37,581 nucleotides of DNA from Octopus sinensis. Taxonomy: Eukaryota. The notes below the pieces were generated by a model that saw only the letters and a list, made by a program, of their open reading frames with translations, was not told the DNA's origin and did not search any database. Each line of letters starts with the position of its first letter. Within the stretch, counting starts at the first letter, position 1. The position numbers were made by a program, and so were the translations under genes. The stretch lies in assembly GCF_006345805.1 (NCBI RefSeq), contig NW_021835906.1, forward strand, positions 1-37,581, written 5' to 3'. Of the stretch, positions 4,078-34,793 are shown piece after piece.

Positions 4078-4690
4078 CTTCCATTTTAGGCACAGGCCCG
4101 AAATTTTGGGGGAGGTGGGGACCAGTCGATTAGATCGACACCAGTACGCCAGTGGTACTTAATTTATCAACACCGAAAGGATGAAAGGCAAAGTCGACCT
4201 CGGCGGAATTTGAACTCAGAACGTAAAGACAGACGAAATATCGATAAGCATTTCGCCCGGCATGCTAACGTTTCTTATTTCTTTATTGCCCACAAGGGCT
4301 AAACGTAGAGGGGACGAACAAGGTCAGACAAACGGATTAAGTCGATTATATCGACGCCAGTGCGTAACTGGTACTTATTTAATCGACCCCGAAAGGATGA
4401 AAGGCAAAGTCGACCTTGGCGGAATTTGAACTCAGAACGTAACTGTAGATGAAATACCTATTTCATTACTACCCACAAGGGGCTAAACACTGAGGGGACA
4501 AACAAGGACAGACAAACGGATTGAGTCGATTATATCGAAGCCAGTGCGTAACTGGTACTTATTTAATTGACCCCGAAAGGATGAAAGGCAAAGTCGACCT
4601 CGGCGGAATTTGAACTCAGAACGTAACGGCAGACGAAATACTGCTAAGCATTTCGCCCGACGTGCTAATGTTTCTGCCAGCACGCCGCCT
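4078..4690 (-). mobile_element. SINE family A head-to-tail trimer
   Basis: Three tandem ~200-bp units, each containing CCGAAAGGATGAAAGGCAAAGTCGACC..GGAATTTGAACTCAGAACGT. The intact tRNA-like head is only at the 4690 end. Confidence 0.85.
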
Positions 4691-5745: not shown

Positions 5746-5838
5746 GCGTGGCTGTGTGGTAAGTAGCTTGCTTTCCAACCACATGGTTCTGCGTTCAGTC
5801 CCACTGCGTGGCACCTTGGGCCATAGTCTTCAACTATA
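5746..5838 (+). mobile_element. SINE family B, 5' part
   Basis: GTGGCTGTGTGGTAAGTAGCTTGC..GTTCAGTCCCACTGCGTGGCACCTTGGGC, cut off at a TA where the next element starts. Confidence 0.8.
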
Positions 5839-6327
5839 CAAGGTTGGCCAAAAGTCACCCGACAGTAAATCAAAATTCCATAAATACTTAATATTCAATT
5901 TTATTTATTCATTCCAATTATGAATGTTTAATAATTGAATGTTGTGAGTTAAAAATCACCGTTTTTTTTTTCTTTTTCTGGGACTCCCTTCATCGAAAAC
6001 CGGTGATTGTCGTACGCTGAAGACAGGTCAATGCCTAGAAACTGCAGTCCGTGCGTATCACTTTGGTTGACGAGGGAGGGATGACCTCCCTTTGCAAATA
6101 CCATAAGGGCACAGAAAGTGTGCCTAAAGCCAGCTGGAGACGATGTTTTCCTGGGGCTACAAGCTACAGTAACACCCACCCTTAGTGGTTAGCCATATTG
6201 AGATGGCAAGTATACCTAGCATTTTTCTATTTATTAGAAAAGTCTAATTTCTATTTTTGTTTTAATCTTGGAATAAAATGGGGGGGGGGGGCTTGATTTA
6301 CTATCAGGTGACTTTTGGCCAACCACA
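5839..6327. mobile_element. non-autonomous Tc1/mariner-type element
   Basis: TIRs GGTTGGCCAAAAGTCACCCGACAGTAAATCAA and the reverse complement of TTGATTTACTATCAGGTGACTTTTGGCCAACC (2 mismatches). TA on both sides (5837-5838, 6328-6329). Confidence 0.8.
5985..6219 (+). other. structured non-coding dispersed element, family E copy 1 (inside the Tc1/mariner-type element)
   Basis: Homologous to 8268-8511, 8626-8756 and 27486-27629. Four hairpins, no ORF and no tRNA head. Confidence 0.7.
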
Positions 6328-6370
6328 TATATAAACGTATACATGCACGCACACACTGATACATATACAT

Positions 6371-6932: not shown

Positions 6933-7149
6933 ATACAGGTATATGTCACTCACACACACGCACGCACGCACGCACACACACGCACACATGCATTATTATA
7001 TAAGAATTGTATTTTAATCATCATTTTTTGATTGTTTATATTTTGTTTGTACTTTTTTTTATTATACATAATAACCACTAAAGCCGGTATCCCTCGATTT
7101 ACACGATTTCGATTTGCAATGCGAATACTAATTCACCGTGTAAATCGAA

Positions 7150-8935
7150 AGACAACCGCGAAAGAGCATCAGATCCGGAAACTGCGTTTTTTTTTCCTCA
7201 GGAAGCAATCCGAGTGATTCAAGAATTAAAAGAAGAACCTTATTGATCAAAGATTCAAAGACTTTGGTAGCTACAAGGAAGAAGGTTGATTGGGTGGTAG
7301 TTACAAGGATCGGAATATTCACCAGTGTTTTTGGAAATAGACATACTAATAGAGACCAATTTCCAGTAAGCTGAAAAGGAAGGCATTTGAGGAAGAGATT
7401 AGACAGAACAGAAATAATTTCAGAAGAGCAATTTTGCAAATCAATAGCAGGAATATTATCAGGAATAGAAGCAGTTTAAGTGTCGACGCTAGAAATTGCT
7501 TTCGCCATAGATTTAGATGTTATACGCATGTCAGGTAAAGGAACACGGAGAAGGAAAATTCGGAACATGGCCAGATAAATCAATGTTAGAATTACTGGAA
7601 AACAACCGGAGAAAAGTGAATCTGTTTTATCTTTAGAAGTTATTACCTAATAACCACTGAAGAGAAGGAAATGCTACAGTTACCATTATTCAATATACTA
7701 CTATAAATTTTCTGAAAGTACTGTGAGTCTAGGTTCTGAAAGGCCATTTAGGTTTTGTCCGCTCAATTACTAATGAAAGGAGACGTTTATTTTGTAAAGA
7801 GCCATCACTGCGATAGAAAAGTGAAAAGTGATACCTCTGAACAATAAGAGAGACACAAGGAGGGAAAAGATTGTGGTTTAACTATCACCGATACGAAGGC
7901 GTCTACCAACCTAAGTGCAAGATACTATCTCAGAAGTTCAACTATTAGCAGCAAGAGAAAAGGAATGATGCCATGGAACATCACAAAGTAAATGTCGAAA
8001 AGAATATCAGACTCTTTGTTGATGGTTTTCAAATGAAGGATCAATGCTTGGAGGGGAGCTTAAAGAGAAACAGAGCAAAGGTAGGATCAGTCAGACACGA
8101 AGCAAAGAGGAAAGAATCATAATCGTCGTAAAGTCGATAGTGAATAAGAAAGCTGAGTGAGATTTTGAGATGGAGAGATATTTAGGACATGGGTTCCGAC
8201 AGAATCAGAGATGCTAGAAATGAGTCTACGTGATGAGTAATAAAAACGGCAGACGATAAAATATTTCATAACATAAGGGGGATCAGCCATCTGAATGTGG
8301 CTAGGGTCAGGGCGGGGTGGTGGGGGTGTTACTGATGCATTTAGCCCCAGGCGAACATCAACGTCACCAGAAGAGCCGACACCATCTCGGTGTCCTTGCC
8401 AGCCTGCAAAGGGAGATCAGCCTCCCCGAAGATACGGATACTACACACGGACCGGTTTCGAGGTTATTGCCTCTTGTCAACGTATGGTAAGCACCGCTCT
8501 TCGTTGAGGGACTTACTCTACAGGCTGGATATATAGATTTTCACAGTAACCACAGTCACTGGCGTAGAAAATCCGTTCGAAAACAATAATAAATCTCTGA
8601 GCGAGATATAAACAGTAACTGCTCTATAACATAAGGGGGATCAGCCATCTGATTGTGGCTAGGGTCAGAGCGGGGTGGTGGGGGTGTTACTGATGCATTT
8701 AGCCCCAGGCGAACATCAACGTCACCAGAAGAGCCGACACCATCTCGGTGTCCTTGATGGATAACAAGAAAAGATTTGGTAAATCTCGTCGGATACAGCA
8801 TCAATTGAAGTAATGTCTTGATGGGATGGTTTGTGATAAAGAAGAGTCAACTGGAAACGATAAAGAAATGAATCCTTTGCTACATAACAATACCGTGTCA
8901 ATGGAACATTTGTGTCCATCATTCAGAAGAGGATG
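7150..8935 (-). mobile_element. heavily decayed CR1/Jockey-group LINE (APE endonuclease to RT), interrupted at 8268-8756
   Basis: Minus-strand remnants in the expected order: LYHKPSHQDITSIDAVSDEIYQIFSCYPS | NILSSAVFITHH (GDFNxHH-like), SSISDSVGTHVLNISPSQNLTQ, LQNCSSEIISVLSNLFLKC, GEYSDPCNYHPINLL (NYRPISLL-like), KVFESLINKVLLLILESLGLL. Confidence 0.75.
8268..8756 (-). mobile_element. 489-bp insertion of family E with 131-bp direct terminal repeats
   Basis: 8268-8398 and 8626-8756 are identical except at 2 positions. The 227-bp middle holds the rest of family E plus ~115 bp of unrelated sequence. Confidence 0.8.
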
Positions 8936-10982: not shown

Positions 10983-11374
10983 ATATATACGACAGGCTTC
11001 TTTCAGTTTCCGTCTACCAAATCCACTCACAAGGCATTGGTCGGCCCGGGGCTATAGCAGAAGACACTTGCCCAAGATGCCACGCAGTGGGACTGAACAC
11101 GGAACCATGTGGTTGGTTAGCAAGCTACTTACCACACAGCCACTCCTATAATATAATATATATATCATATAATATATATATTTATATATATTATATGATT
11201 TTTGTCTATTTATATATATTATTATATTTATATATGTTGGATTTTATATCCGTTCTGTTGATACAAATGAATATATCAATATATGTATGTATTTGATCTT
11301 TGTGTGTGGATCTTAGTAATGTTCCATTAGTTCCTGCTCGCATTGCCTCCGCTCAAATTAAGAAGTGGAATATA
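10317..11374. mobile_element. TIR-bounded non-autonomous DNA element with a nested SINE
   Basis: 78-bp inverted repeats at 10317-10394 and 11297-11374 with 4 mismatches. The outer ends read TATA. Confidence 0.7.
10707..11146 (-). mobile_element. SINE family B, near full length
   Basis: Head GGAGTGGCTGTGTGGTAAGTAGC (A-box-like) and GTTCAGTCCC (B-box-like), internal (TA)(TG) tract, AAGTAAAAGAGT tail. Confidence 0.9.
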
Positions 11375-11655
11375 TATACAAGAGTTTCGGAATAGAGTAG
11401 GTTAGATCCGGGCTACATATATTTCATAACGAGCGGAGCCTTAGATGTGGTAAAAATCCATGCCTGGTGGATATAAAAATCCACAACCTCCTGTCTCAAT
11501 AAACCACTATTGCCGTCTGAAAGTTGTTTTTCTTTTTATATTTCCTACGTATTGATTGAAGCTAACTTTCTTACTTTACCTCGGCCCCTGGACCTTACAT
11601 TATATATATATAATATATATATATATAATATATATATATATATTATATATATATT

Positions 11656-12107
11656 CATCCATCATTCATCCATCCATCCATCCATACATGCATGCATGCA
11701 TCCATCATACATACATGCATACATACATACATACATACATACATACATACATACATACATCCATCCATCCATCCATACATGCATGCATCCATCCATCCAT
11801 ACATACATGTATACATACATACATACATACATACATACATACATACATACATACATACATCCATACATCCATCCATACATACATACATCCATACATACAT
11901 CCATCCATCCATCCATACATGCATGCATCCATCCATCCATACATACATGTATACATACATACAAACATACATACATACATACATACATACATACATACAT
12001 ACATACATCCATACATCCATCCATACATACATACATCCATACATACATACATATATCCATACATACATCCATACATACATCCATGCATCCATACATGCAT
12101 GCATGCA

Positions 12108-12142
<35 letters not shown>

Positions 12143-14195
12143 CCATACATACATCCATGCATACATCCATACATACATACATCCATACATCCATCCATAC
12201 ATCCATCCATACATACATACATCCATCCATCCATCCATCCATACATACATACATACATACATACATACATACATACATACATGCATACATACATCCATAC
12301 ATACATCCATACATCCATACATCATACATACATACATACATACATACATACATACATACATCAACCATCCATCCACCTCCATACCATACATACATACATA
12401 CATACATCATACATACATACATGCAATACATACTCCATACATCCATACATCCATACATACATACATACATACATACATACATACATACATACATGCATAC
12501 ATACATCCATACATCCATAGATACATACATACATACATACATACATCCATCCATACATACATACATACATACATACATACATACATACATACATGCATAC
12601 ATACATCCATACATCCATACATACATACATACATACATACATACATACATGCATCCATACATACATACATACATACATGCATACATACATCCATACATCC
12701 ATACATACATACATCCATACATCAATACATACATACATACATACATGCATCCATCCATACATACATACATACATACATACATACATACATACATACATCC
12801 ATACATACATACATACATGCATACATACATACATGCATCCATACATACATACATACATACATACATACATACATACATACATCATGCATGCATACATACA
12901 TACATACATACATCATACATACATACATACATACTATATCATACATACATACATACATGCATACATCCATACATACAAACATGCATCCATACATACATAC
13001 ATACATACATACATACATACATGCATACATACATCCATACATCCATACATACATCCATACATACATACATACATGCATACATACATACATGCATCCATAC
13101 ATACATACATACATACATACATACATACATACATACATACATGCATACATACATACATACATACATACATACATACATACATACATGCATGCATACATAC
13201 ATACATACATACATACATACATACATACATACCTACATACATCCATACATACATGCATACAACTACATGCATCCATACATACAACATACATACATACATA
13301 CATACATACATACATACATGCATACATACATACATACATACAACATGATATATACATACATACATCATACATACATACATACATACATACATACATACAT
13401 ACATACATACATACATGCATACATACATACATGCATCCATACATACATACATACATACATACATACATACATACATACATGCATACAAATATACATACAT
13501 ACATACATACATACATGCATACATACATACATACATGCATACATACATACATACATCCATCCATACATACATACATCCATACATACATACATACATGCAT
13601 ACATACATACATACATCCATCCATACATACATACATACATACATACATACATACATACATGCATCCATACATACATACATACATCCATACATACATACAT
13701 ATATCCATACATACATACATACATCCATCCATACATACATACATACATACATCCATCCATACATACATACATACATACATACATCCATCCATACATACAT
13801 ACATCCATCCATCCATACATCCATGCATACATACATACATACATCCATCCATACATACATACATCCATACATACATCCATCCATACATACATACATACAT
13901 ACATCCATACATCCATACATACATACATCCATCCATACATACATACATACATACATCCATACATACATACATACATACATCCATACATACATACATACAT
14001 CCATCAATACATACATCCATATATACATACATACATACATATACATACATACATACATACACACACATACATACATACATACATACATACATACATGCAT
14101 ACATACATACATACATATACATACATACATACATATATACATACATACATACATATACATACATACATACATACATACATACATACATACACACA

Positions 14196-14227
<32 letters not shown>

Positions 14228-15834
14228 CATACATACATACATACATGCATACATACATCCGTACATACATACATACATATACATACATACATACATACAT
14301 ACATACATACATACATACACACATAAATACATACATACATACATACATACATACATACATACATCCATACATACATACATCCATACATACATACATACAT
14401 ACATCCATCCATACATACATACATCCATCCATACATACATACATACATACATCCATCCATACATACATACATCCATACATACATACATACATACATACAT
14501 CCATCCATACATACATCCATCCATCCATCCATACATACATACATACATACATACATACATACATCCATACATACATACATACATACATACATACATACAT
14601 CCATCCATACATACATACATACATACATACATACATCCATACATACATACATACATACATACATACATACATACATAAATGCATCCATCCATACATGCAT
14701 ACATCCATACATCCATCCATACATACATACATCCATACATACATACATACATACATACATACATACATACATCCATCCATACATACATCCATCCATACAT
14801 ACATACATACATACATCCATCCATACATGCATACATCCATACATCCATCCATACATACATACATCCATACATACATACATACATATATACATACATACAT
14901 ACATCCATACATACATACATACATACATCCATACATACATCCATCCATACATACATCCATCCATACATACATACATACATACATACATACATCCATACAT
15001 ACATCCATCCATACATACATACATACATACATCCATCCATACATACATCCATCCATACATACATACATACATACATCCATCCATACATACATCCATCCAT
15101 ACATACAACATACATACATACATACATCCATACATACATACATACAACATACATACATACATACATACATACATACATCCATACAATACATACATACATA
15201 CATCATACATACATACATACATACATACTAATACATCCATCCATACATGCATACATCCATACATCCATCCACATACATACATACATACATACATACATAC
15301 ATACATACATCCATACATACATACATCCATCCATACATACATCCATCCATACATCCATCCATCCATACATACATCCATACATACATACATCCATCCATCC
15401 ATCCATACATACATCCATCCATACATGCATACATCCATACATCCATCCATACATACATCCATCCATACATACATACATCCATACATACATACATCCATCC
15501 ATCCATCCATACATACATCCATCCATACATGCATACATGCATACATCCATCCATACATACATCCATCCATACATACATACATCCATACATACATACATAC
15601 ATACATCCATCCATACATACATCCATCCATACATACATACATACATCCATCCATACATACATACATACATACATCCATCCATACATACATCCATCCATCC
15701 ATACATACACACATCCATACATCCATACATACATACATCCATCCATCCATCCATCCATCCATCCATACATACATACATACATACATACATACATACATAC
15801 ATACATACATACATACATACACACATACATACAT
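11656..15834. repeat. ~4.2-kb (CATA)n satellite with CATC and CATG variants
   Basis: Read directly from the sequence. It produces the HTYI and MYVC ORFs. Confidence 0.97.
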
Positions 15835-16182: not shown

Positions 16183-16274
16183 AATGATGATGATGATGAT
16201 GATGATGGTGGTTGTGGTGGTGATGATGATGGTGGTGGTGGTGGTGGTGGTGATGATGGTGGTGGTGGTGGTGG

Positions 16275-16308
<34 letters not shown>

Positions 16309-16454
16309 GGTGGTGGTGATGATGGTGGTGGTGGTGGTGGTGGTGGTGATGATGGTGGTGGTGGTGATGGTGGTGGTGGTGGTGGTGGTGGTGGTGATGA
16401 TGATGATGGTGATGGTGGTGGTGATGGTGGGTGCGGTGGTGGTGGTGGTGGTGG

Positions 16455-16484
<30 letters not shown>
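16183..16484. repeat. compound (GAT)n/(GGT)n microsatellite
   Basis: Read directly from the sequence. Confidence 0.95.
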
Positions 16485-19677: not shown

Positions 19678-20087
19678 AGGAGTGGCTATGTGGTAAGTAG
19701 CTTGTTTACGAACCACATGGTTCCGGGTTCAGTCCCACTGCGTGGCACCTTGGGCAAGTGTCTTCTACTATAGCCTCGGGCCGACCAAAGGCTTGTGAGT
19801 GGATTTGGTAAACGGAAACTGAAAGAAGCCCGTCGTATATATGTATATATATATATATGCGTGTGTGTCTGTGTTTGTGTGTCTGTGTTTGTCCCCCTAG
19901 CATTGCTTGACAACCGATGCTGGTGTGTTTATGTCTCCGTTACTTAGCGGTTCGGCAAAAGAGACCGATAGAATAAGTACTGGGCTTACAAAAGAATAAG
20001 TCCCGGGGTCGAGTTGCTCGATTAAAGGCGGTGCTCCAGCATGGCCGCAGTCAAATGACTGAAACAAGTAAAAGAGTAAAAGAGAGT
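19678..20087 (+). mobile_element. SINE family B, full length
   Basis: Head, internal (TA)(TG) tract and GTAAAAGA tail. Confidence 0.9.
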
Positions 20088-22031: not shown

Positions 22032-22190
22032 CATATATACGACAGGCTTCTTTCAATTTCCGTCTACCAAATCCACTCACAAGGCATTGGTCGGCCCGGG
22101 GCTATAGCAGAAGACACTTGCCCAGTGGGACTGAACCCGGAACCATGTTGTTGGTAAGCAAGCTACTTACCACACAGCCACTCATGCGCC
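21788..22190 (-). mobile_element. SINE family B, near full length
   Basis: Same family landmarks. A short duplicate of the tail lies at 21655-21700. Confidence 0.9.
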
Positions 22191-24265: not shown

Positions 24266-24430
24266 GGAGTGGCTGTGTGGTAAGTAGCTTGCTTACCAGC
24301 CACATGGTTCCGGGTTCAGTCGCACTGTGTGGCATCTTGGGCAAGTGTCTTCTGCTATAGCCCCGGGCCGACCAATGCCTTGTGAGTGGATTTGGTAGAC
24401 GGAAACTGAAAGAAGCCTGTCGTATATATG

Positions 24431-27276: not shown

Positions 27277-27443
27277 TATATATATACAGATGGGCTTCTT
27301 TCAGTTTCCGTCTACCTAAATCCACTTACAAGGCTTTGGTCGGCCCGAGGCTATAATAGAAACATCTGCTCAAGGTGCCACAGAGTGGGTCTGAACCGGA
27401 ACCATGTGGTTCGTAAGCAAGCTACTTACCACATACCCACTCC
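26960..27443 (-). mobile_element. SINE family B with an expanded internal (TA)n
   Basis: Family landmarks on both sides of a ~120-bp AT tract. Confidence 0.88.
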
Positions 27444-27485
27444 AGCGTCTATATATATATATATACATATATATATAGAATGGTT

Positions 27486-27629
27486 GTATACTGTCAATCT
27501 AACACGAACGTGACAGTAGGGGGTACACCACCGCTGTTTAGCCCTAGGAAGCATCGACGCCTCCTGATGGCTTTGACACATTTTTCCTGTGTCCTTATAT
27601 ACATTTACGAAGGGGAGACAAACACCCCC
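27486..27629 (-). other. family E, divergent partial copy
   Basis: GCTGTTTAGCCCTAGGAAGCATCG..GGCTTTGACACATTTTTCCTGTGTCCTTAT..AAGGGGAG aligns with the other E copies and keeps the hairpins. Confidence 0.6.
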
Positions 27630-27987
<358 letters not shown>

Positions 27988-30713: not shown

Positions 30714-33120
30714 AACGCTCCCACGATCGATTGGCCCGCATCAATTTGTACAACATCTTCCCGGTTCGGCCAGGCCCTTCTTGACGTGGCTGAAGATTGT
30801 TTTCTCTCGCAACATGTTGAATATCCGACAAGGCATCGGTCTGGGTTGCAGCCATCTATGCTGGATCTGGTATTCTCCCGCTATCCAAGATCAGTGTCAG
30901 ACGTATCTGTGTGCGCCCCTCTTGCCAAGAGTGATATGCGGTCCTGAAGTTCGTCATGCACACAACTTTTTCTACGCCCACGACTACTTCGCTGCCACGT
31001 AGAGTCTTCTCTGCAATTAATCTTGAAATTCTAACCGAGGCTTCCGCGCTTCTGGACTGGCGATCCCTGATAACGTTGTCCTCAGTTGACGAACTATGGT
31101 CATCCCTCAAAGCATATGTAATCTGGTTGACTGACCAGGCAGTTCCCGTTGGGCTTCCCAAGAAGAAGAAACACAAGCCCTGGGTGACGAAGAAGGTTAA
31201 ACGAGAACGTCGACTCAGAGATATTGCTTGGGCTGAATTCAAAAATCTGGATTCGACTGCATCTTTTGAGGTGTACAAAACTCAACGAGACCGAGCCGTG
31301 AAAATTGAAAAGGAAGAACGCTTCAGTTATGAATACAAAATCGCGGCAAATGCCAGTAGCAATCCAAAAAACCTTCTTTGCCCATGTCCAACGGAATCCC
31401 GCTTGAACAACCAGATTGCAACGTTGGTAGACTCAACAGGCGTATCGATTGAGGACCCTTATCACAGAGTCAATTATTTGCCGAGGCTTTTTCAACTATT
31501 TCAAACAAGATGATGGTCGTGAACCCCCTCCATTTGATAGATCGGTACCTCCAATGCTTCGATTGGTCATCACGCGGGACGAAGTCCAAACGTGTTATTC
31601 AAGGCCTCGATGTCAACAAGGGTCACGGCCCTGACGGCATACACCCAGGTTATCAAAGCGTTGGCTCCGGTCATCTGCGAGCCCTTAACACGTCTATTCA
31701 ATATGTCATTGGCGACGGGTGTTATACCTGCGGACTGGAGAACAGCGATAATCTGCCCAATTTTCAAGAAAGGGAGCCGCGAAGACCCGCTTAACTACCG
31801 ACCGGTTTCCCTTACATCAATAATCAGCAAGATGTTCGAAACCATCCTAAGAAAGAAAAGTATGATGCTCCACCTCCAAAAAACAGCCTCTATCTCTGAT
31901 TCCCAACACGGCTTCGTGCCGAAGAGATCATGCTTGACAACTTACTGTAATGGAAGAATTGGTGACGCGCATCCTCGATGATAGTGATGCTGTTGACATC
32001 GTTTTATTGGACTTTGCCAAAGCTTTTGACTCGGTTAACTACCGCCTATTACTTGTCAAGCTTCAAGCATATAGTTTCCATCCGGATATTGTACGATGGG
32101 TTGGTGCCTTCCTCTCAGATCGCTCCTTCCAAGTCCAAGTTAATGGTTCGCGGTCCGACGTCTCCAGTGCGAGCAGTGGCGTGCCTCAAGGTTCAGTGCT
32201 TGGGCCCTTATTGTTCTTAGTCTTCATAAATGACTTGCCCGACGACCTCACGCAACACCCTTCTATTTGCCGACGATATCAAACTGGTCGCTCCTCGCGG
32301 TGATATAGAGGATCTTCGTCGATGCCTCCACCAAATTTGAAGTGGTCTAACGAATGGGACCTGTGTCTGAACGTATCAAAGTGCTGTCATCTGCCTGTTG
32401 GCTCTCCTCCTGCAACTCAACTTGATTTCGAGCCGGGTCGTCTGCTGCTGGAGAGGACCGATCAGGTAAAGGACCTGGGTATCTTGGTGAATTCCTCCTT
32501 TTCGCCTTCGGCCCAGTGCGTCCATGCTGCCAACAAAGCACGCGGAATTCTGTTCTTGATTCGACGGTCATTCGGAATGCTCACAGCAGCCATATTCCTA
32601 CCACTCTATGTCACGCTGGTGAGACCCATATTGGAGTACGGGATTCAAACCTCTTCTCCTTATCTCCTCAAAGACATACAGCTGGCTACCCGCATGGTTC
32701 ATGGTCTCAAAAATTTGTCCTATGAAGAAAGGCTGAGGACGCTCGACTTTTATTCTCTAGAAAAACGCCGCCGCCGTGGTGAGCTCATTCTCGCCCACAA
32801 CATCATAAGCGGAAAGTGTAACCTCTCGAAAGAGCTGTTCTTCACTCCTACTCCAGAGCGTCGGCTGCGGGGTCACTCCGAAAAGCTCTACCTGCGACGA
32901 TTTCATCTCAATCGAAGGAGAGGAGCTTTCTCCGTCCGGGTTGCGGATCCGTGGAACAAGCTGCCAGACGAGATGAAGATGCCGACGACCGCTTTGTTCA
33001 AAGCCTCTCTGGACCTCAAGTGGCCTGAACTCTTTACATGAACACCACCCTGTACTTAACTCCATGTCCCCCTACATGGCCTTGCTATTTGCTTTTGAGC
33101 CAAAAAATTAACTAACTAAC
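30714..33120 (+). mobile_element. 5'-truncated CR1-clade LINE, ORF2 (APE C-terminus plus RT) broken by frameshifts
   Basis: NAPTIDW, QHVEYPTR, LDLVFS, KGHGPDGIHP, WRTAIICPIFKKG, NYRPVSLTS, QHGF, LDFAKAFDSV, GVPQGSVLGPLLF, FADDIK-like, KDLGI, LYVTLVRPILEY, LEKRRRRGEL, WNKLP, ending LDLKWPELFT* at 33041. 3' UTR hairpin CCATGT/ACATGG at 33062-33079 and a (TAAC)n tail. Confidence 0.95.
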
Positions 33121-33305
33121 TACTAGTGCTGCTGCTACTACAACAACTACTACTACTACTATTACTACTACCATTACTACTACTACTACTGCTACTACTA
33201 CTACCACTACCCCTACTGCTGCTGCTTCTACTACCACTACTACTACTACTAAAGCAACAGGAGCAACAGCTGGAGCAGCAGTAAGTGCAGCAGTAGGAGC
33301 AACAA
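33121..33305. repeat. (ACT)n/(GCT)n trinucleotide array
   Basis: Read directly from the sequence. Confidence 0.9.
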
Positions 33306-34623: not shown

Positions 34624-34793
34624 CATATATACGACGGGCTTCTTTCAGTTTCCGTCTACCAAATCTACTCACAAAGCTTTGGTCGGCCCGAGGCTATAGT
34701 AGAAGACACTTGCCCAAGGTGCTACGCAGTGGGACTGAACCCGGAACCATGTGGTTCGTAAGCAAGCTACTTACCACACAGCCACTCCTGCGC
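34344..34793 (-). mobile_element. SINE family B, full length
   Basis: Family landmarks and an internal (TA)n. Confidence 0.9.

What the first reader, a model, noticed from the sequence alone, without database searches (positions are those of the whole stretch)
5985..6219. Family E: a ~240-nt non-coding element whose four hairpins survive through compensatory mutations
Seen in sequence: homologous copies lie at 5985-6219 (+), 8268-8511 and 8626-8756 (-), and 27486-27629 (-). Shared anchors include TCCCT(T)CA(T/A)CGAA and CCTGGGGCTA(C/A)A(A/T)GC(TA/AT)CAGTAACACCC. The copies are visibly divergent, yet the stems are kept. One stem is GGCACA/TGTGCC (6108-6124), GACACC/GGTGTC (8378-8394) and GACACA/TGTGTC (27575-27593), i.e. 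double changes that preserve pairing. A second is GGGAGG/CCTCCC, GGGAG/CTCCC and GGGG/CCCC. A third is GGAGA/TTTCC, GGTGA/TCGCC and AGGAG/TTCCT; each has a G-U wobble that works on only one strand, and it is the same strand in all three. The terminal stem is GCCAT/ATGGC, AGCCA/TGGCT and CTGTCA/TGACAG. There is no tRNA head, ORF or TIR. A possible TTTTTCT TSD flanks copy 1 (5973-5979, 6222-6228) but is low complexity. Inference: structure is under selection, as expected for a mobile structured RNA (unrecognised ribozyme, RT-recognition scaffold or SINE from an unusual RNA) or a single-stranded-DNA rolling-circle element.
Basis: partly seen in the sequence, partly recalled or inferred. Interest (0 to 1): 0.75.

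Follow-up and report, generated by a model that had tools for sequence, protein, structure and literature searches.

The report
Hammerhead-ribozyme retroelement copies in octopus DNA
The repeated ~245-base element is a short non-coding mobile element of an octopus genome. Its first third folds into a hammerhead self-cleaving ribozyme, which makes it a new example of an already known kind of ribozyme-carrying retroelement rather than a new class of RNA.

Summary
Copies lie at 5982-6222(+), 8262-8514(-) and 27480-27635(-). A fourth, 8626-8756(-), is a 98.5% duplicate of the second copy's 3' half. The four 3' hairpins are kept in all copies, several through changes on both sides of a pair.

In the two full-length copies the 5' third (6011-6055+, 8444-8486-) is a type I hammerhead ribozyme of the usual animal design:
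- a 6-bp helix I;
- the CUGANGA box, which in copy 2 is UUGACAA, the documented U3-A8 swap of the C3-G8 core pair;
- a 4-bp helix II with a 6-nt loop;
- GAAA, then a tiny palindromic helix III (ACUGCAGU or ACCGGU) and a GUC cleavage site.

A literature-based descriptor hits only these two sites and none of 1500 shuffled windows. On short slices Rfam reports Hammerhead_1 (E=0.1) and Hammerhead_HH9 (E=3e-4), both below the curated thresholds.

Best reading: a non-autonomous retroelement like animal retrozymes, Penelope-like-element repeats or schistosome SMalpha. The shared 3' ends, the 5' truncations and a partial tandem point to reverse transcription.

Limits: only two ribozyme-bearing copies could be collected, and no catalysis or expression data exist. 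It is a new member of a known kind, of moderate interest.

The parts
5982..6222 (+). Copy c1, full length (5980-6221 if TTTTTCT is a true target-site duplication)
   Evidence: blastn and nhmmer against c2; sequence
5994..6072 (+). c1 5' domain: long closing helix (5994-6007 with 6057-6072) around the hammerhead three-way junction
6011..6055 (+). c1 hammerhead. Helix I is 6011-6016/6050-6055. CUGAAGA is 6017-6023. Helix II plus loop is 6024-6037, with a C.A mismatch at 10.1-11.1. GAA is 6038-6040. The palindromic helix III ACUGCAGU is 6041-6048 and C17 is 6049. Predicted cleavage is between 6049 and 6050.
   Evidence: descriptor hit, 0/1500 shuffles; Rfam Hammerhead_1 15.8 bits, E=0.1, model 1-45
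6074..6090 (+). c1 hairpin A, GGGAGG/CCUCCC
6108..6124 (+). c1 hairpin B, GGCACA/UGUGCC; two pairs covary with c2 and c3
6136..6151 (+). c1 hairpin C, GGAGAC/GUUUUCC, with a G-U pair
6150..6177 (+). c1 conserved, apparently unpaired 28-nt motif CCUGGGGCUACAAGCUACAGUAACACCC
6190..6209 (+). c1 terminal hairpin D (core GCCAU/AUGGC, 6192-6207), followed by a 12-13-nt tail
8262..8514 (-). Copy c2, full length; the element ends at 8268 (...CCCCUUAUGUUAU)
8427..8503 (-). c2 5' domain: closing helix (8503-8490 with 8442-8427) around the hammerhead
8444..8486 (-). c2 hammerhead. Helix I is 8486-8481/8449-8444. The core UUGACAA is 8480-8474 (U3-A8 variant). Helix II GAGG/CCUC with loop CAAUAA is 8473-8460. 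GAA is 8459-8457. The palindromic helix III ACCGGU is 8456-8451 and C17 is 8450. Predicted cleavage is between 8450 and 8449.
   Evidence: descriptor hit; Rfam Hammerhead_HH9 22.8 bits, E=3.1e-4; U3-A8 covariation described in PMC4209133
8284..8426 (-). c2 3' domain: hairpin A 8426-8411, B 8394-8378, C 8368-8350, motif 8351-8325, D 8303-8284
8515..8625 (-). 111-nt stretch between c2b and c2. It is either ordinary flank or the 5' part of a 358-nt unit.
   Evidence: period 358; the unit folds with z=-2.7 linear and -3.2 circular; no homology to the c1 flanks; duplex test not significant
8626..8756 (-). Copy c2b: 5'-truncated (starts at hairpin B, no ribozyme), 98.5% identical to c2, with the same 3' end
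27480..27629 (-). Copy c3: 5'-truncated (starts at hairpin A), embedded in (TA)n/(ATAG)n microsatellite. Hairpin A is 27629-27613, B 27593-27575, C 27564-27547, D 27516-27491.

Best explanation
Family E is a short (about 245 nt, possibly 358 nt in one subfamily) non-coding, non-autonomous retroelement of an Octopus genome. It carries a canonical animal type I hammerhead ribozyme.

Layout on the sense strand (+ for c1):
- a 12-nt leader;
- a hammerhead held inside a roughly 20-bp closing helix;
- four hairpins plus a 28-nt conserved unpaired motif;
- a short tail.

Proposed working (inferred):
1. Helix III is only 2 bp with a 2-4-nt palindromic loop. The ribozyme should therefore cut after GUC only when two copies pair through that palindrome, either in a multimeric transcript or in trans.
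2. [quoted passage not shown]
3. This RNA, linear or ligated into a circle, is copied into DNA by the reverse transcriptase of an autonomous partner.
4. The partner is most likely a Penelope-like element, less likely a LINE. It probably recognises the conserved 3' hairpins and motif.
5. Target-primed reverse transcription from a fixed 3' end explains the shared 3' termini, the 5'-truncated copies (c2b, c3), the partial tandem c2b-c2, and insertion into AT-rich or microsatellite DNA.

Shown here: homology, the ribozyme motif, strand-specific conserved structure, the truncation pattern.
Inferred: catalysis, dimer dependence, circularisation, the identity of the partner.

The compensatory changes reflect selection on the master copies of different subfamilies, not on the inserted copies themselves. 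c1 already has a broken 10.1-11.1 pair.
For: (1) A descriptor was written from the published architecture: helix I 6 bp, CUGANGA, helix II 4 bp, GAA, a palindromic A...U stretch of 4-8 nt, then H17 (PMC4209133).
- It hits only 6011-6055(+) and, allowing the core variant, 8444-8486(-) in the whole window on both strands.
- The two strict versions give 0 hits in 1500 dinucleotide shuffles. The loosest version gives 7 in 1500.

(2) c2's two core differences are exactly C3->U and G8->A. These two bases form a Watson-Crick pair in the active fold (PMC3884650). U3-A8 is a documented natural covariation in hammerheads of Penelope-like elements (PMC4209133).

(3) Helix III differs between the copies by an indel, yet is a perfect palindrome in both (ACUGCAGU, ACCGGU).

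(4) On a structure-blind alignment of the 5' domains, 92.6% of cells pair, against 23-43% in slid controls. Five pairs change on both sides, against 0 in slid controls.

(5) Rfam on 55-57-nt slices gives Hammerhead_1 at 15.8 bits, E=0.1, at exactly 6011-6055. It gives Hammerhead_HH9 at 22.8 bits, E=3.1e-4, at 8441-8490. The HH9 match includes the UUAC(C) loop-1 side and an A-rich 6-nt loop 2.

(6) The 3' hairpins are conserved with double changes. G-U pairs and fold z-scores favour the same strand as the ribozyme.

(7) c2 and c2b share an exact 3' end and have unrelated flanks. c3 is 5'-truncated inside microsatellite.

(8) Nothing suggests coding or another RNA class: no tRNA, and no coding signal.
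Against: - Only two ribozyme-bearing copies could be examined, and they are homologous, so they are not independent.
- Both Rfam scores are far below the curated gathering scores (34 and 52). Runs on 256-3300-nt stretches or the whole window reported nothing. Scaled to the whole window, the E-values would be about 66 and 0.2.
- c1 has a C.A mismatch at the normally invariant G10.1-C11.1 pair.
- The descriptor was written after the motif had been seen by eye.
- Only a 1.37-unit partial tandem with a single ribozyme is present, so cis dimer cleavage cannot happen at this locus.
- No Penelope-type ORF was found in the window, and no link to any autonomous element was shown.
- The three-sequence structural alignment was tuned by hand.
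Confidence: 0.75

Rival explanations
1. An ordinary LINE-dependent SINE or LINE 3'-UTR fragment. The hairpins serve reverse-transcriptase recognition and the hammerhead-like 5' domain is a chance or long-dead resemblance with no role.
For: The copies are dispersed single copies with a fixed 3' end, a terminal hairpin and 5' truncations, as in stringent SINEs. Rfam scores are below the gathering thresholds. Degenerate LINE pieces are nearby.
Against: The full hammerhead architecture is absent from 1500 shuffles. There is a compensatory U3-A8 core change and a palindromic helix III in both copies. There is no tRNA, 5S or 7SL head. Family E shares no 3' tail with the CR1 element or the SINEs of the window. 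There is no A-rich or microsatellite tail on c2 or c2b.
Confidence: 0.12
2. The stems are kept by a DNA-level mutational process (template switching within quasi-palindromes), not by selection on an RNA. The family would then be a structure-neutral repeat.
For: Template switching is known to create paired double changes in hairpins (own knowledge, not tested here). Only three sequences are available.
Against: It does not explain the unpaired conserved hammerhead boxes or the non-adjacent C3/G8 covariation. It does not explain the 12 G-U cells that work on one strand only, or the long-range closing helix, whose arms lie about 50 nt apart.
Confidence: 0.05
3. A single-stranded-DNA rolling-circle (Helitron-like) non-autonomous element, with hairpin D as the 3' terminal hairpin.
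For: c1 begins with TC and has CTAG 12 nt after a hairpin.
Against: c2, c2b and c3 end in GTTAT or CCATTC, not CTRR. No copy lies between a host A and T. 5' truncation with a fixed 3' end and one-strand G-U pairing point to an RNA intermediate. A hammerhead is an RNA-only catalyst.
Confidence: 0.02
4. A decayed fragment of a protein-coding sequence on the opposite strand, for example a reverse-transcriptase piece. The minus-sense frame is open for 52-70 codons in all copies, and c1 reads ...GFR...(30 aa)...IDLSSAYD, reminiscent of LINE RT motifs.
For: Open frames in the same register in c1, c2 and c3.
Against: There is no Pfam hit even at E<=10, and no homologue among 5.8 billion proteins. The motif-like residues are absent from c2 and c3, and amino-acid identity is only 22-41%.
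Confidence: 0.02

Closest known systems
Metazoan non-LTR retrozymes (Cervera & de la Pena 2020, PMC7229834; review PMC7761336)
   Same: Both are non-coding units of a few hundred bases carrying a type I hammerhead with a weak, palindromic helix III, and a well-paired RNA. They occur in molluscs (mussel units are 350-390 bp). The 358-nt c2b-c2 period falls in that range.
   Different: Retrozymes are defined by tandem arrays with a ribozyme in every unit and by abundant circular RNAs. Here there are dispersed single copies with common 5' and 3' ends, 5'-truncated copies, and only a 1.37-unit partial tandem with one ribozyme. GC is 46-54%, against the stated <45-50%. Expression is unknown.
Hammerheads in the pseudo-LTRs of Penelope-like elements (Cervera & de la Pena 2014, PMC4209133; Craig et al. 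2021)
   Same: Shared features are the U3-A8 core covariation, the palindromic helix III and dimer logic, partial tandems, 5' truncation, and insertion in AT-rich or microsatellite DNA. Single dispersed motifs are common.
   Different: The hammerheads described for animal PLEs are mostly 'minimal': a long helix II (6-8 bp), a short helix I, and an extra base between positions 9 and 10.1. Family E has the canonical 6-bp/4-bp design. No RT/GIY-YIG ORF is adjacent.
SMalpha / Sjalpha SINE-like retroposons of schistosomes (Ferbeyre 1998; Laha 2000; cited in PMC8490949)
   Same: Both are dispersed, SINE-sized (about 335 bp) non-coding retroposons carrying an active type I hammerhead. This is the closest match to the dispersed-copy anatomy.
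   Different: There is no sequence relation. From memory, SMalpha is reported to have pol III boxes and an A-rich 3' end, and neither is seen here.
Rfam RF00163 Hammerhead_1 and RF02275 Hammerhead_HH9 (clan CL00010)
   Same: These are the best Rfam matches, and the only ones below E=1 on the ribozyme slices, on the right strand and at the right coordinates. The c2 match includes loop-1 and loop-2 nucleotides.
   Different: Scores are 15.8 and 22.8 bits against gathering scores of 34 and 52. HH9 is an amniote intronic ribozyme, not a repeat.

Membership tests
Hammerhead ribozyme, type I | Core boxes C3U4G5A6N7G8A9 and G12A13A14, the A15.1-U16.1 pair, and H17 at the cleavage site | tested here: met
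   c1 has CUGAAGA...GAA-A...U-C exactly. c2 has UUGACAA, i.e. C3U+G8A, the known pair-preserving variant.
Hammerhead ribozyme, type I | Three helices around the core, with helix I open and helices II and III closed | tested here: met
   Helix I is 6/6 bp in both copies. Helix II is 4/4 bp in c2 and 3/4 bp in c1. Helix III is 2 bp plus loop.
Hammerhead ribozyme, type I | Conserved G10.1-C11.1 pair | tested here: inconclusive
   Present in c2. In c1 it is C.A, so c1 is probably a decayed copy.
Hammerhead ribozyme, type I | Canonical animal design: helix I 6 bp, helix II 4 bp, helix III 1-2 bp capped by a 2-4-nt palindromic loop (PMC4209133) | tested here: met
   0 of 1500 shuffles.
Hammerhead ribozyme, type I | Score at or above the Rfam gathering threshold | tested here: not met
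   15.8 against 34 bits (RF00163) and 22.8 against 52 bits (RF02275). Nothing was reported on stretches of 256 nt or longer.
Hammerhead ribozyme, type I | Site-specific self-cleavage | not testable with these tools
   Needs in vitro transcription of monomer and dimer constructs.
Metazoan non-LTR retrozyme | Head-to-tail tandem repeats of 150-450 bp with a type I hammerhead in each unit | tested here: not met
   Only c2b-c2 is tandem-like (period 358, 1.37 units, one ribozyme). c1 and c3 are solitary.
Metazoan non-LTR retrozyme | Non-coding unit with a stable, highly paired RNA | tested here: met
   No coding signal. Fold z is -2.7 to -3.2 for the 358-nt unit and -1.9 for c1.
Metazoan non-LTR retrozyme | Accumulates as circular RNA joined at the cleavage site | not testable with these tools
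   No RNA data were available.
Penelope-like element pseudo-LTR or derivative | Flanks, or derives from the flank of, an RT plus GIY-YIG ORF | tested here: inconclusive
   No such ORF is next to any copy. The nearest RT fragments are LINE-type. The window was not scanned exhaustively, and no Octopus PLE could be fetched.
Penelope-like element pseudo-LTR or derivative | Minimal hammerhead with a long helix II and an extra base between positions 9 and 10.1 | tested here: not met
   Helix II is 4 bp and there is no extra base in c2.
Penelope-like element pseudo-LTR or derivative | Partial tandems, 5' truncation, AT-rich or microsatellite targets | tested here: met
   This is consistent with PLEs but not specific to them.
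Classical SINE | Head derived from tRNA, 5S or 7SL RNA with pol III boxes | tested here: not met
   ARAGORN found none. Rfam found no such family on the element.
Helitron-type rolling-circle element | 5'-TC and 3'-CTRR ends, inserted between A and T | tested here: not met
   The ends of c2, c2b and c3 do not fit.

The most novel reading that the evidence does not exclude
Family E may be a hybrid not yet described: a hammerhead-bearing element that spreads as a linear, SINE-like RNA rather than through tandem arrays and RNA circles. It would use target-primed reverse transcription from a fixed 3' end. Its conserved 3' module (four hairpins plus a 28-nt unpaired motif) would be the dedicated recognition scaffold for a Penelope-like reverse transcriptase. 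That would give the first sequence-defined template-recognition module for such an enzyme in molluscs, and the first cephalopod ribozyme retroelement.
Probability: 0.25. Interest if true: 0.55.

Novelty: new member of a known kind. Interest (0 to 1): 0.35.

Why it matters
Hammerheads in animal repeats are well known, and they are numerous in schistosomes, mussels, corals and amphibians. The full-text library searched here holds no description of one in a cephalopod.

This family is useful for two reasons:
- It shows dispersed copies with fixed ends and 5' truncations, which bears on whether such elements move as circles or as linear templates.
- It pairs a canonical ribozyme with a separately conserved 3' module that could be the handle used by the still unidentified reverse transcriptase.

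Practically, it shows that Rfam scans on long stretches miss these ribozymes because of the speed filters. The hits appeared only on slices of under 60 nt.

Tried and rejected
1. Rfam on the whole window, on 3.3 kb and on 256-276-nt slices gave no hit on the element. This turned out to be a filter effect. Slices of 55-57 nt gave hammerhead hits.

2. The 3' domain alone against Rfam gave only chance-level matches.

3. Opposite-strand ORF idea: no Pfam hit and no homologues. Rejected.

4. Attempts to collect more copies all failed:
- a metagenome scan with the 27-nt anchor gave 0;
- protein searches with the window's CR1 ORFs, meant to reach more Octopus DNA, gave one O. vulgaris locus only;
- that 20-kb locus (L001) has no family E copy, by nhmmer or by covariance model;
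- the covariance model of the 5' domain found no third copy in the window.

5. Flank homology tests found none:
- c1 upstream or downstream against the c2b-c2 spacer;
- the sequence upstream of c2b against the 5' half of c2.
The element borders therefore stand, and the 111-nt spacer is not shared by c1.

6. The spacer-to-c2 duplex test was not significant. Whether the spacer belongs to the unit rests only on the period and the fold z-score.

7. Helitron ends, tRNA head and pol III boxes are absent.

8. The bacterial promoter/terminator scan was uninformative.

Full report
CONTEXT. The window is eukaryotic. It is full of microsatellites, carries a frame-shifted CR1-type LINE at 30956-33041 and many copies of a short repeat. 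The LINE's last ORF is 89% identical to a protein encoded on Octopus vulgaris chromosome OX597823.1. That O. vulgaris locus (L001) shares the window's short repeats at 75-94% identity. The window is therefore from an Octopus or a close relative.

THE OBSERVATION. The four stretches are homologous. I call them c1 (5982-6222, +), c2 (8262-8514, -), c2b (8626-8756, -) and c3 (27480-27635, -).
- c1 and c2 are 67% identical over 197 nt (E=8e-15; nhmmer about 1e-16).
- c3 matches a c1+c2 profile at E=2.4e-7.
- c2b is 98.5% identical to the last 131 nt of c2, so it adds no independent information on structure.
- No further copy exists in the window or in L001, by nhmmer or by covariance model.
- The flanks of the copies are unrelated to one another, so the borders are real.
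- c1 and c2 start at the same point (TCCCU..CA.CGAA). c2 and c2b end at exactly the same base (...CCCCUUAUGUUAU). c2b and c3 lack the 5' part.

I made a structural alignment of c1, c2 and c3 by hand. On it, 118 of 124 pair cells (95%) are standard pairs. Sliding the 3' partners by 1-3 columns gives 34-46%. Eleven pairs change on both sides and stay paired, against none in any slid control. Six pairs have a broken cell. A structure-blind MAFFT plus RNAalifold run recovers the same four hairpins.

Hairpin by hairpin:
- Hairpin A (GGGAGG/CCUCCC) is conserved, with only one-sided, wobble-compatible changes.
- Hairpin B has two true double changes (G-C to A-U, A-U to C-G).
- Hairpin C has two (A-U to U-G, A-U to G-C).
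- Terminal hairpin D has two or three.

Twelve paired cells are G-U, which would be C-A mismatches on the other strand. The fold z-scores agree: sense -1.9 (c1) and -0.8 (c2), antisense +0.1 and +0.3.

The caveats are that it rests on three sequences and that the three-way alignment was tuned to the structure.

The 5' third, present only in c1 and c2, reads as follows.
- c1: CGUACG-CUGAAGA-CAGG(UCAAUG)CCUA-GAA-ACUGCAGU-C|CGUGCG
- c2: CAUACG-UUGACAA-GAGG(CAAUAA)CCUC-GAA-ACCGGU-C|CGUGUG

This is the layout of a type I hammerhead. Cervera & de la Pena describe the canonical animal form as follows: helix I of 6 bp, helix II of 4 bp, and a helix III of 1-2 bp capped by a 2-4-nt palindromic loop. 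Such a ribozyme is active only when two copies pair (PMC4209133).

I coded that description as a search pattern.
- In the real window, on both strands, it hits only 6011-6055(+) with the exact core CUGANGA and one mismatch in helix II.
- Allowing two core differences, it also hits 8444-8486(-).
- In 1500 dinucleotide-preserving shuffles of the window, the two strict versions gave no hit. The loosest version gave 7.

Three further points argue against chance.
- First, c2's two core differences are C3 to U and G8 to A. C3 and G8 form a Watson-Crick pair in the active structure (PMC3884650). U3-A8 in place of C3-G8 is a described natural covariation, with about 1,300 hits in Schistosoma mansoni, found there by homology to a Penelope-like element (PMC4209133).
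- Second, helix III differs by a 2-nt indel between the copies, yet is a perfect palindrome in both.
- Third, helix I has a G-C to A-U double change. The junction is also closed by a further irregular helix of about 14 bp (5994-6007/6057-6072 and 8503-8490/8442-8427) with three more double changes.

On the MAFFT alignment of the two 5' domains, 92.6% of cells pair, against 23-43% when slid. Five pairs change on both sides, against none when slid.

RFAM. Runs on the whole window, on 3.3 kb and on about 260-nt slices returned nothing on the element. On slices of 57 and 55 nt, where the tool's filters are laxer, the results were:
- c1 gave RF00163 Hammerhead_1 at 15.8 bits, E=0.1, full model, at exactly 6011-6055.
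- c2 gave RF02275 Hammerhead_HH9 at 22.8 bits, E=3.1e-4. The match includes UUACC on the 5' side of helix I, an A-rich 6-nt loop 2 and GUA after helix I, the positions Rfam's consensus keeps for the loop contacts.

Both scores are well below the curated thresholds (34 and 52 bits). Scaled to the whole window, the E-values would be about 66 and 0.2. Rfam is therefore supporting evidence, not proof. c1 also has C.A in place of the G10.1-C11.1 pair, so it is probably a decayed copy. c2 has no visible defect.

WHAT KIND OF ELEMENT.
- There is no tRNA or other small-RNA head.
- The opposite strand is open for 52-70 codons in each copy. It has no Pfam match and no relative among 5.8 billion proteins, so I reject a coding origin.
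- A fixed 3' end with 5'-truncated copies indicates copying from the 3' end of an RNA, that is, target-primed reverse transcription.
- c3 lies inside (TA)n/(ATAG)n, and c1 follows a T-run.
- c2b and c2 lie 111 bp apart in the same orientation, a 358-bp period.
- If the 111-nt stretch belongs to the unit, this is a partial tandem of the kind Penelope-like elements make. The 358-nt unit folds better than shuffles (z=-2.7 linear, -3.2 as a circle permuted at the cleavage site, antisense -1.2).
- Against that, c1 does not share this stretch, and a direct duplex test was not significant. The unit size stays open.

COMPARISON WITH KNOWN ELEMENTS. Three known groups fit.
- Animal non-LTR retrozymes are 150-450-bp tandem units with type I hammerheads, expressed as circles, and are known from a mussel (PMC7229834, PMC7761336).
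- Hammerheads occur in the pseudo-LTRs of Penelope-like elements (PMC4209133).
- The SMalpha/Sjalpha SINE-like retroposons of schistosomes are a third group (cited in PMC8490949).

Family E works like all three, but it fails the defining tandem feature of retrozymes in this window. It has the canonical rather than the 'minimal' hammerhead typical of Penelope-like elements. It also lacks the SINE head. I therefore file it as a hammerhead-bearing non-autonomous retroelement, with the Penelope-like partner as an inference at about 40%. A recent preprint argues that animal retrozymes derive from Penelope pseudo-LTRs (10.64898/2026.07.22.740005). That makes these categories overlap in any case.

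NOVELTY. The full-text library holds no report of hammerheads in cephalopods. The motif class, its association with retroelements and even the U3-A8 variant are all published. This is a new member of a known kind.

LIMITS.
- I could not obtain more copies.
- The conclusions on the ribozyme rest on two related sequences.
- Nothing is known about transcription or cleavage.

Noticed in passing
window 5835-5873 and 6293-6331: A 39-nt inverted repeat (87% complementary, 419 nt between the arms) brackets copy c1. The 32-nt core occurs nowhere else in the window. c1 may have inserted into a small foldback or MITE-like element.
   Followed up: partly
window 5748-5838, 11053-11143, 19682-19772, 22123-22184, 24269-24359, 27368-27440, 34695-34785: There are many copies of a roughly 90-nt piece of an abundant short repeat, 86-92% alike, also present in O. 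vulgaris locus L001 at 83-86%. By eye it looks like the tRNA-related head of an octopus SINE, although ARAGORN calls no tRNA.
   Followed up: partly
window 11645-15834: A 4.2-kb (ATAC)n microsatellite of about 1050 units gives GC skew near -0.9 and spurious ORFs of up to 1179 codons on both strands.
   Followed up: no
window 30956-33041, then 33119-33251: A CR1-type LINE has its reverse transcriptase split over several frames (RVT_1, E=2e-13) and is followed by an (ACT)n tail. The best protein match carries a bird-style locus tag (llap_6084), yet its exact sequence is encoded on an O. vulgaris chromosome. This may be a naming or contamination oddity in the source databases.
   Followed up: partly
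window 7100-7520 (- strand): A degenerate, frame-shifted LINE reverse-transcriptase fragment (by eye: ...SDPCNYHPINLL...) lies about 750 nt downstream of c2 on the same strand. No continuity with c2 could be shown.
   Followed up: partly
window 4276-4641: A 184-bp unit is repeated twice in tandem (91% match). By eye it resembles another octopus short interspersed repeat.
   Followed up: no
window 5985-5993 with 6073-6081 (c1); 8509-8506 with 8424-8421 (c2): The conserved 5' leader (UCCCUUCAU, or CCUC in c2) can pair with the GGGAGG arm of hairpin A and so extend the closing helix of the ribozyme domain. This alternative to hairpin A is a possible conformational switch.
   Followed up: no
window 8613-8619 and 8544-8550 (- strand): The 111-nt stretch between c2b and c2 contains GUUACUG twice. 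This is the complement of the CAGUAAC core of the conserved 28-nt motif (8334-8328). In the predicted fold one of them pairs with it.
   Followed up: partly
window 16191-16471: A (TGG/TGA)n array with a 30-nt superperiod lies immediately after the (ATAC)n block, and GC skew changes sign sharply there.
   Followed up: no
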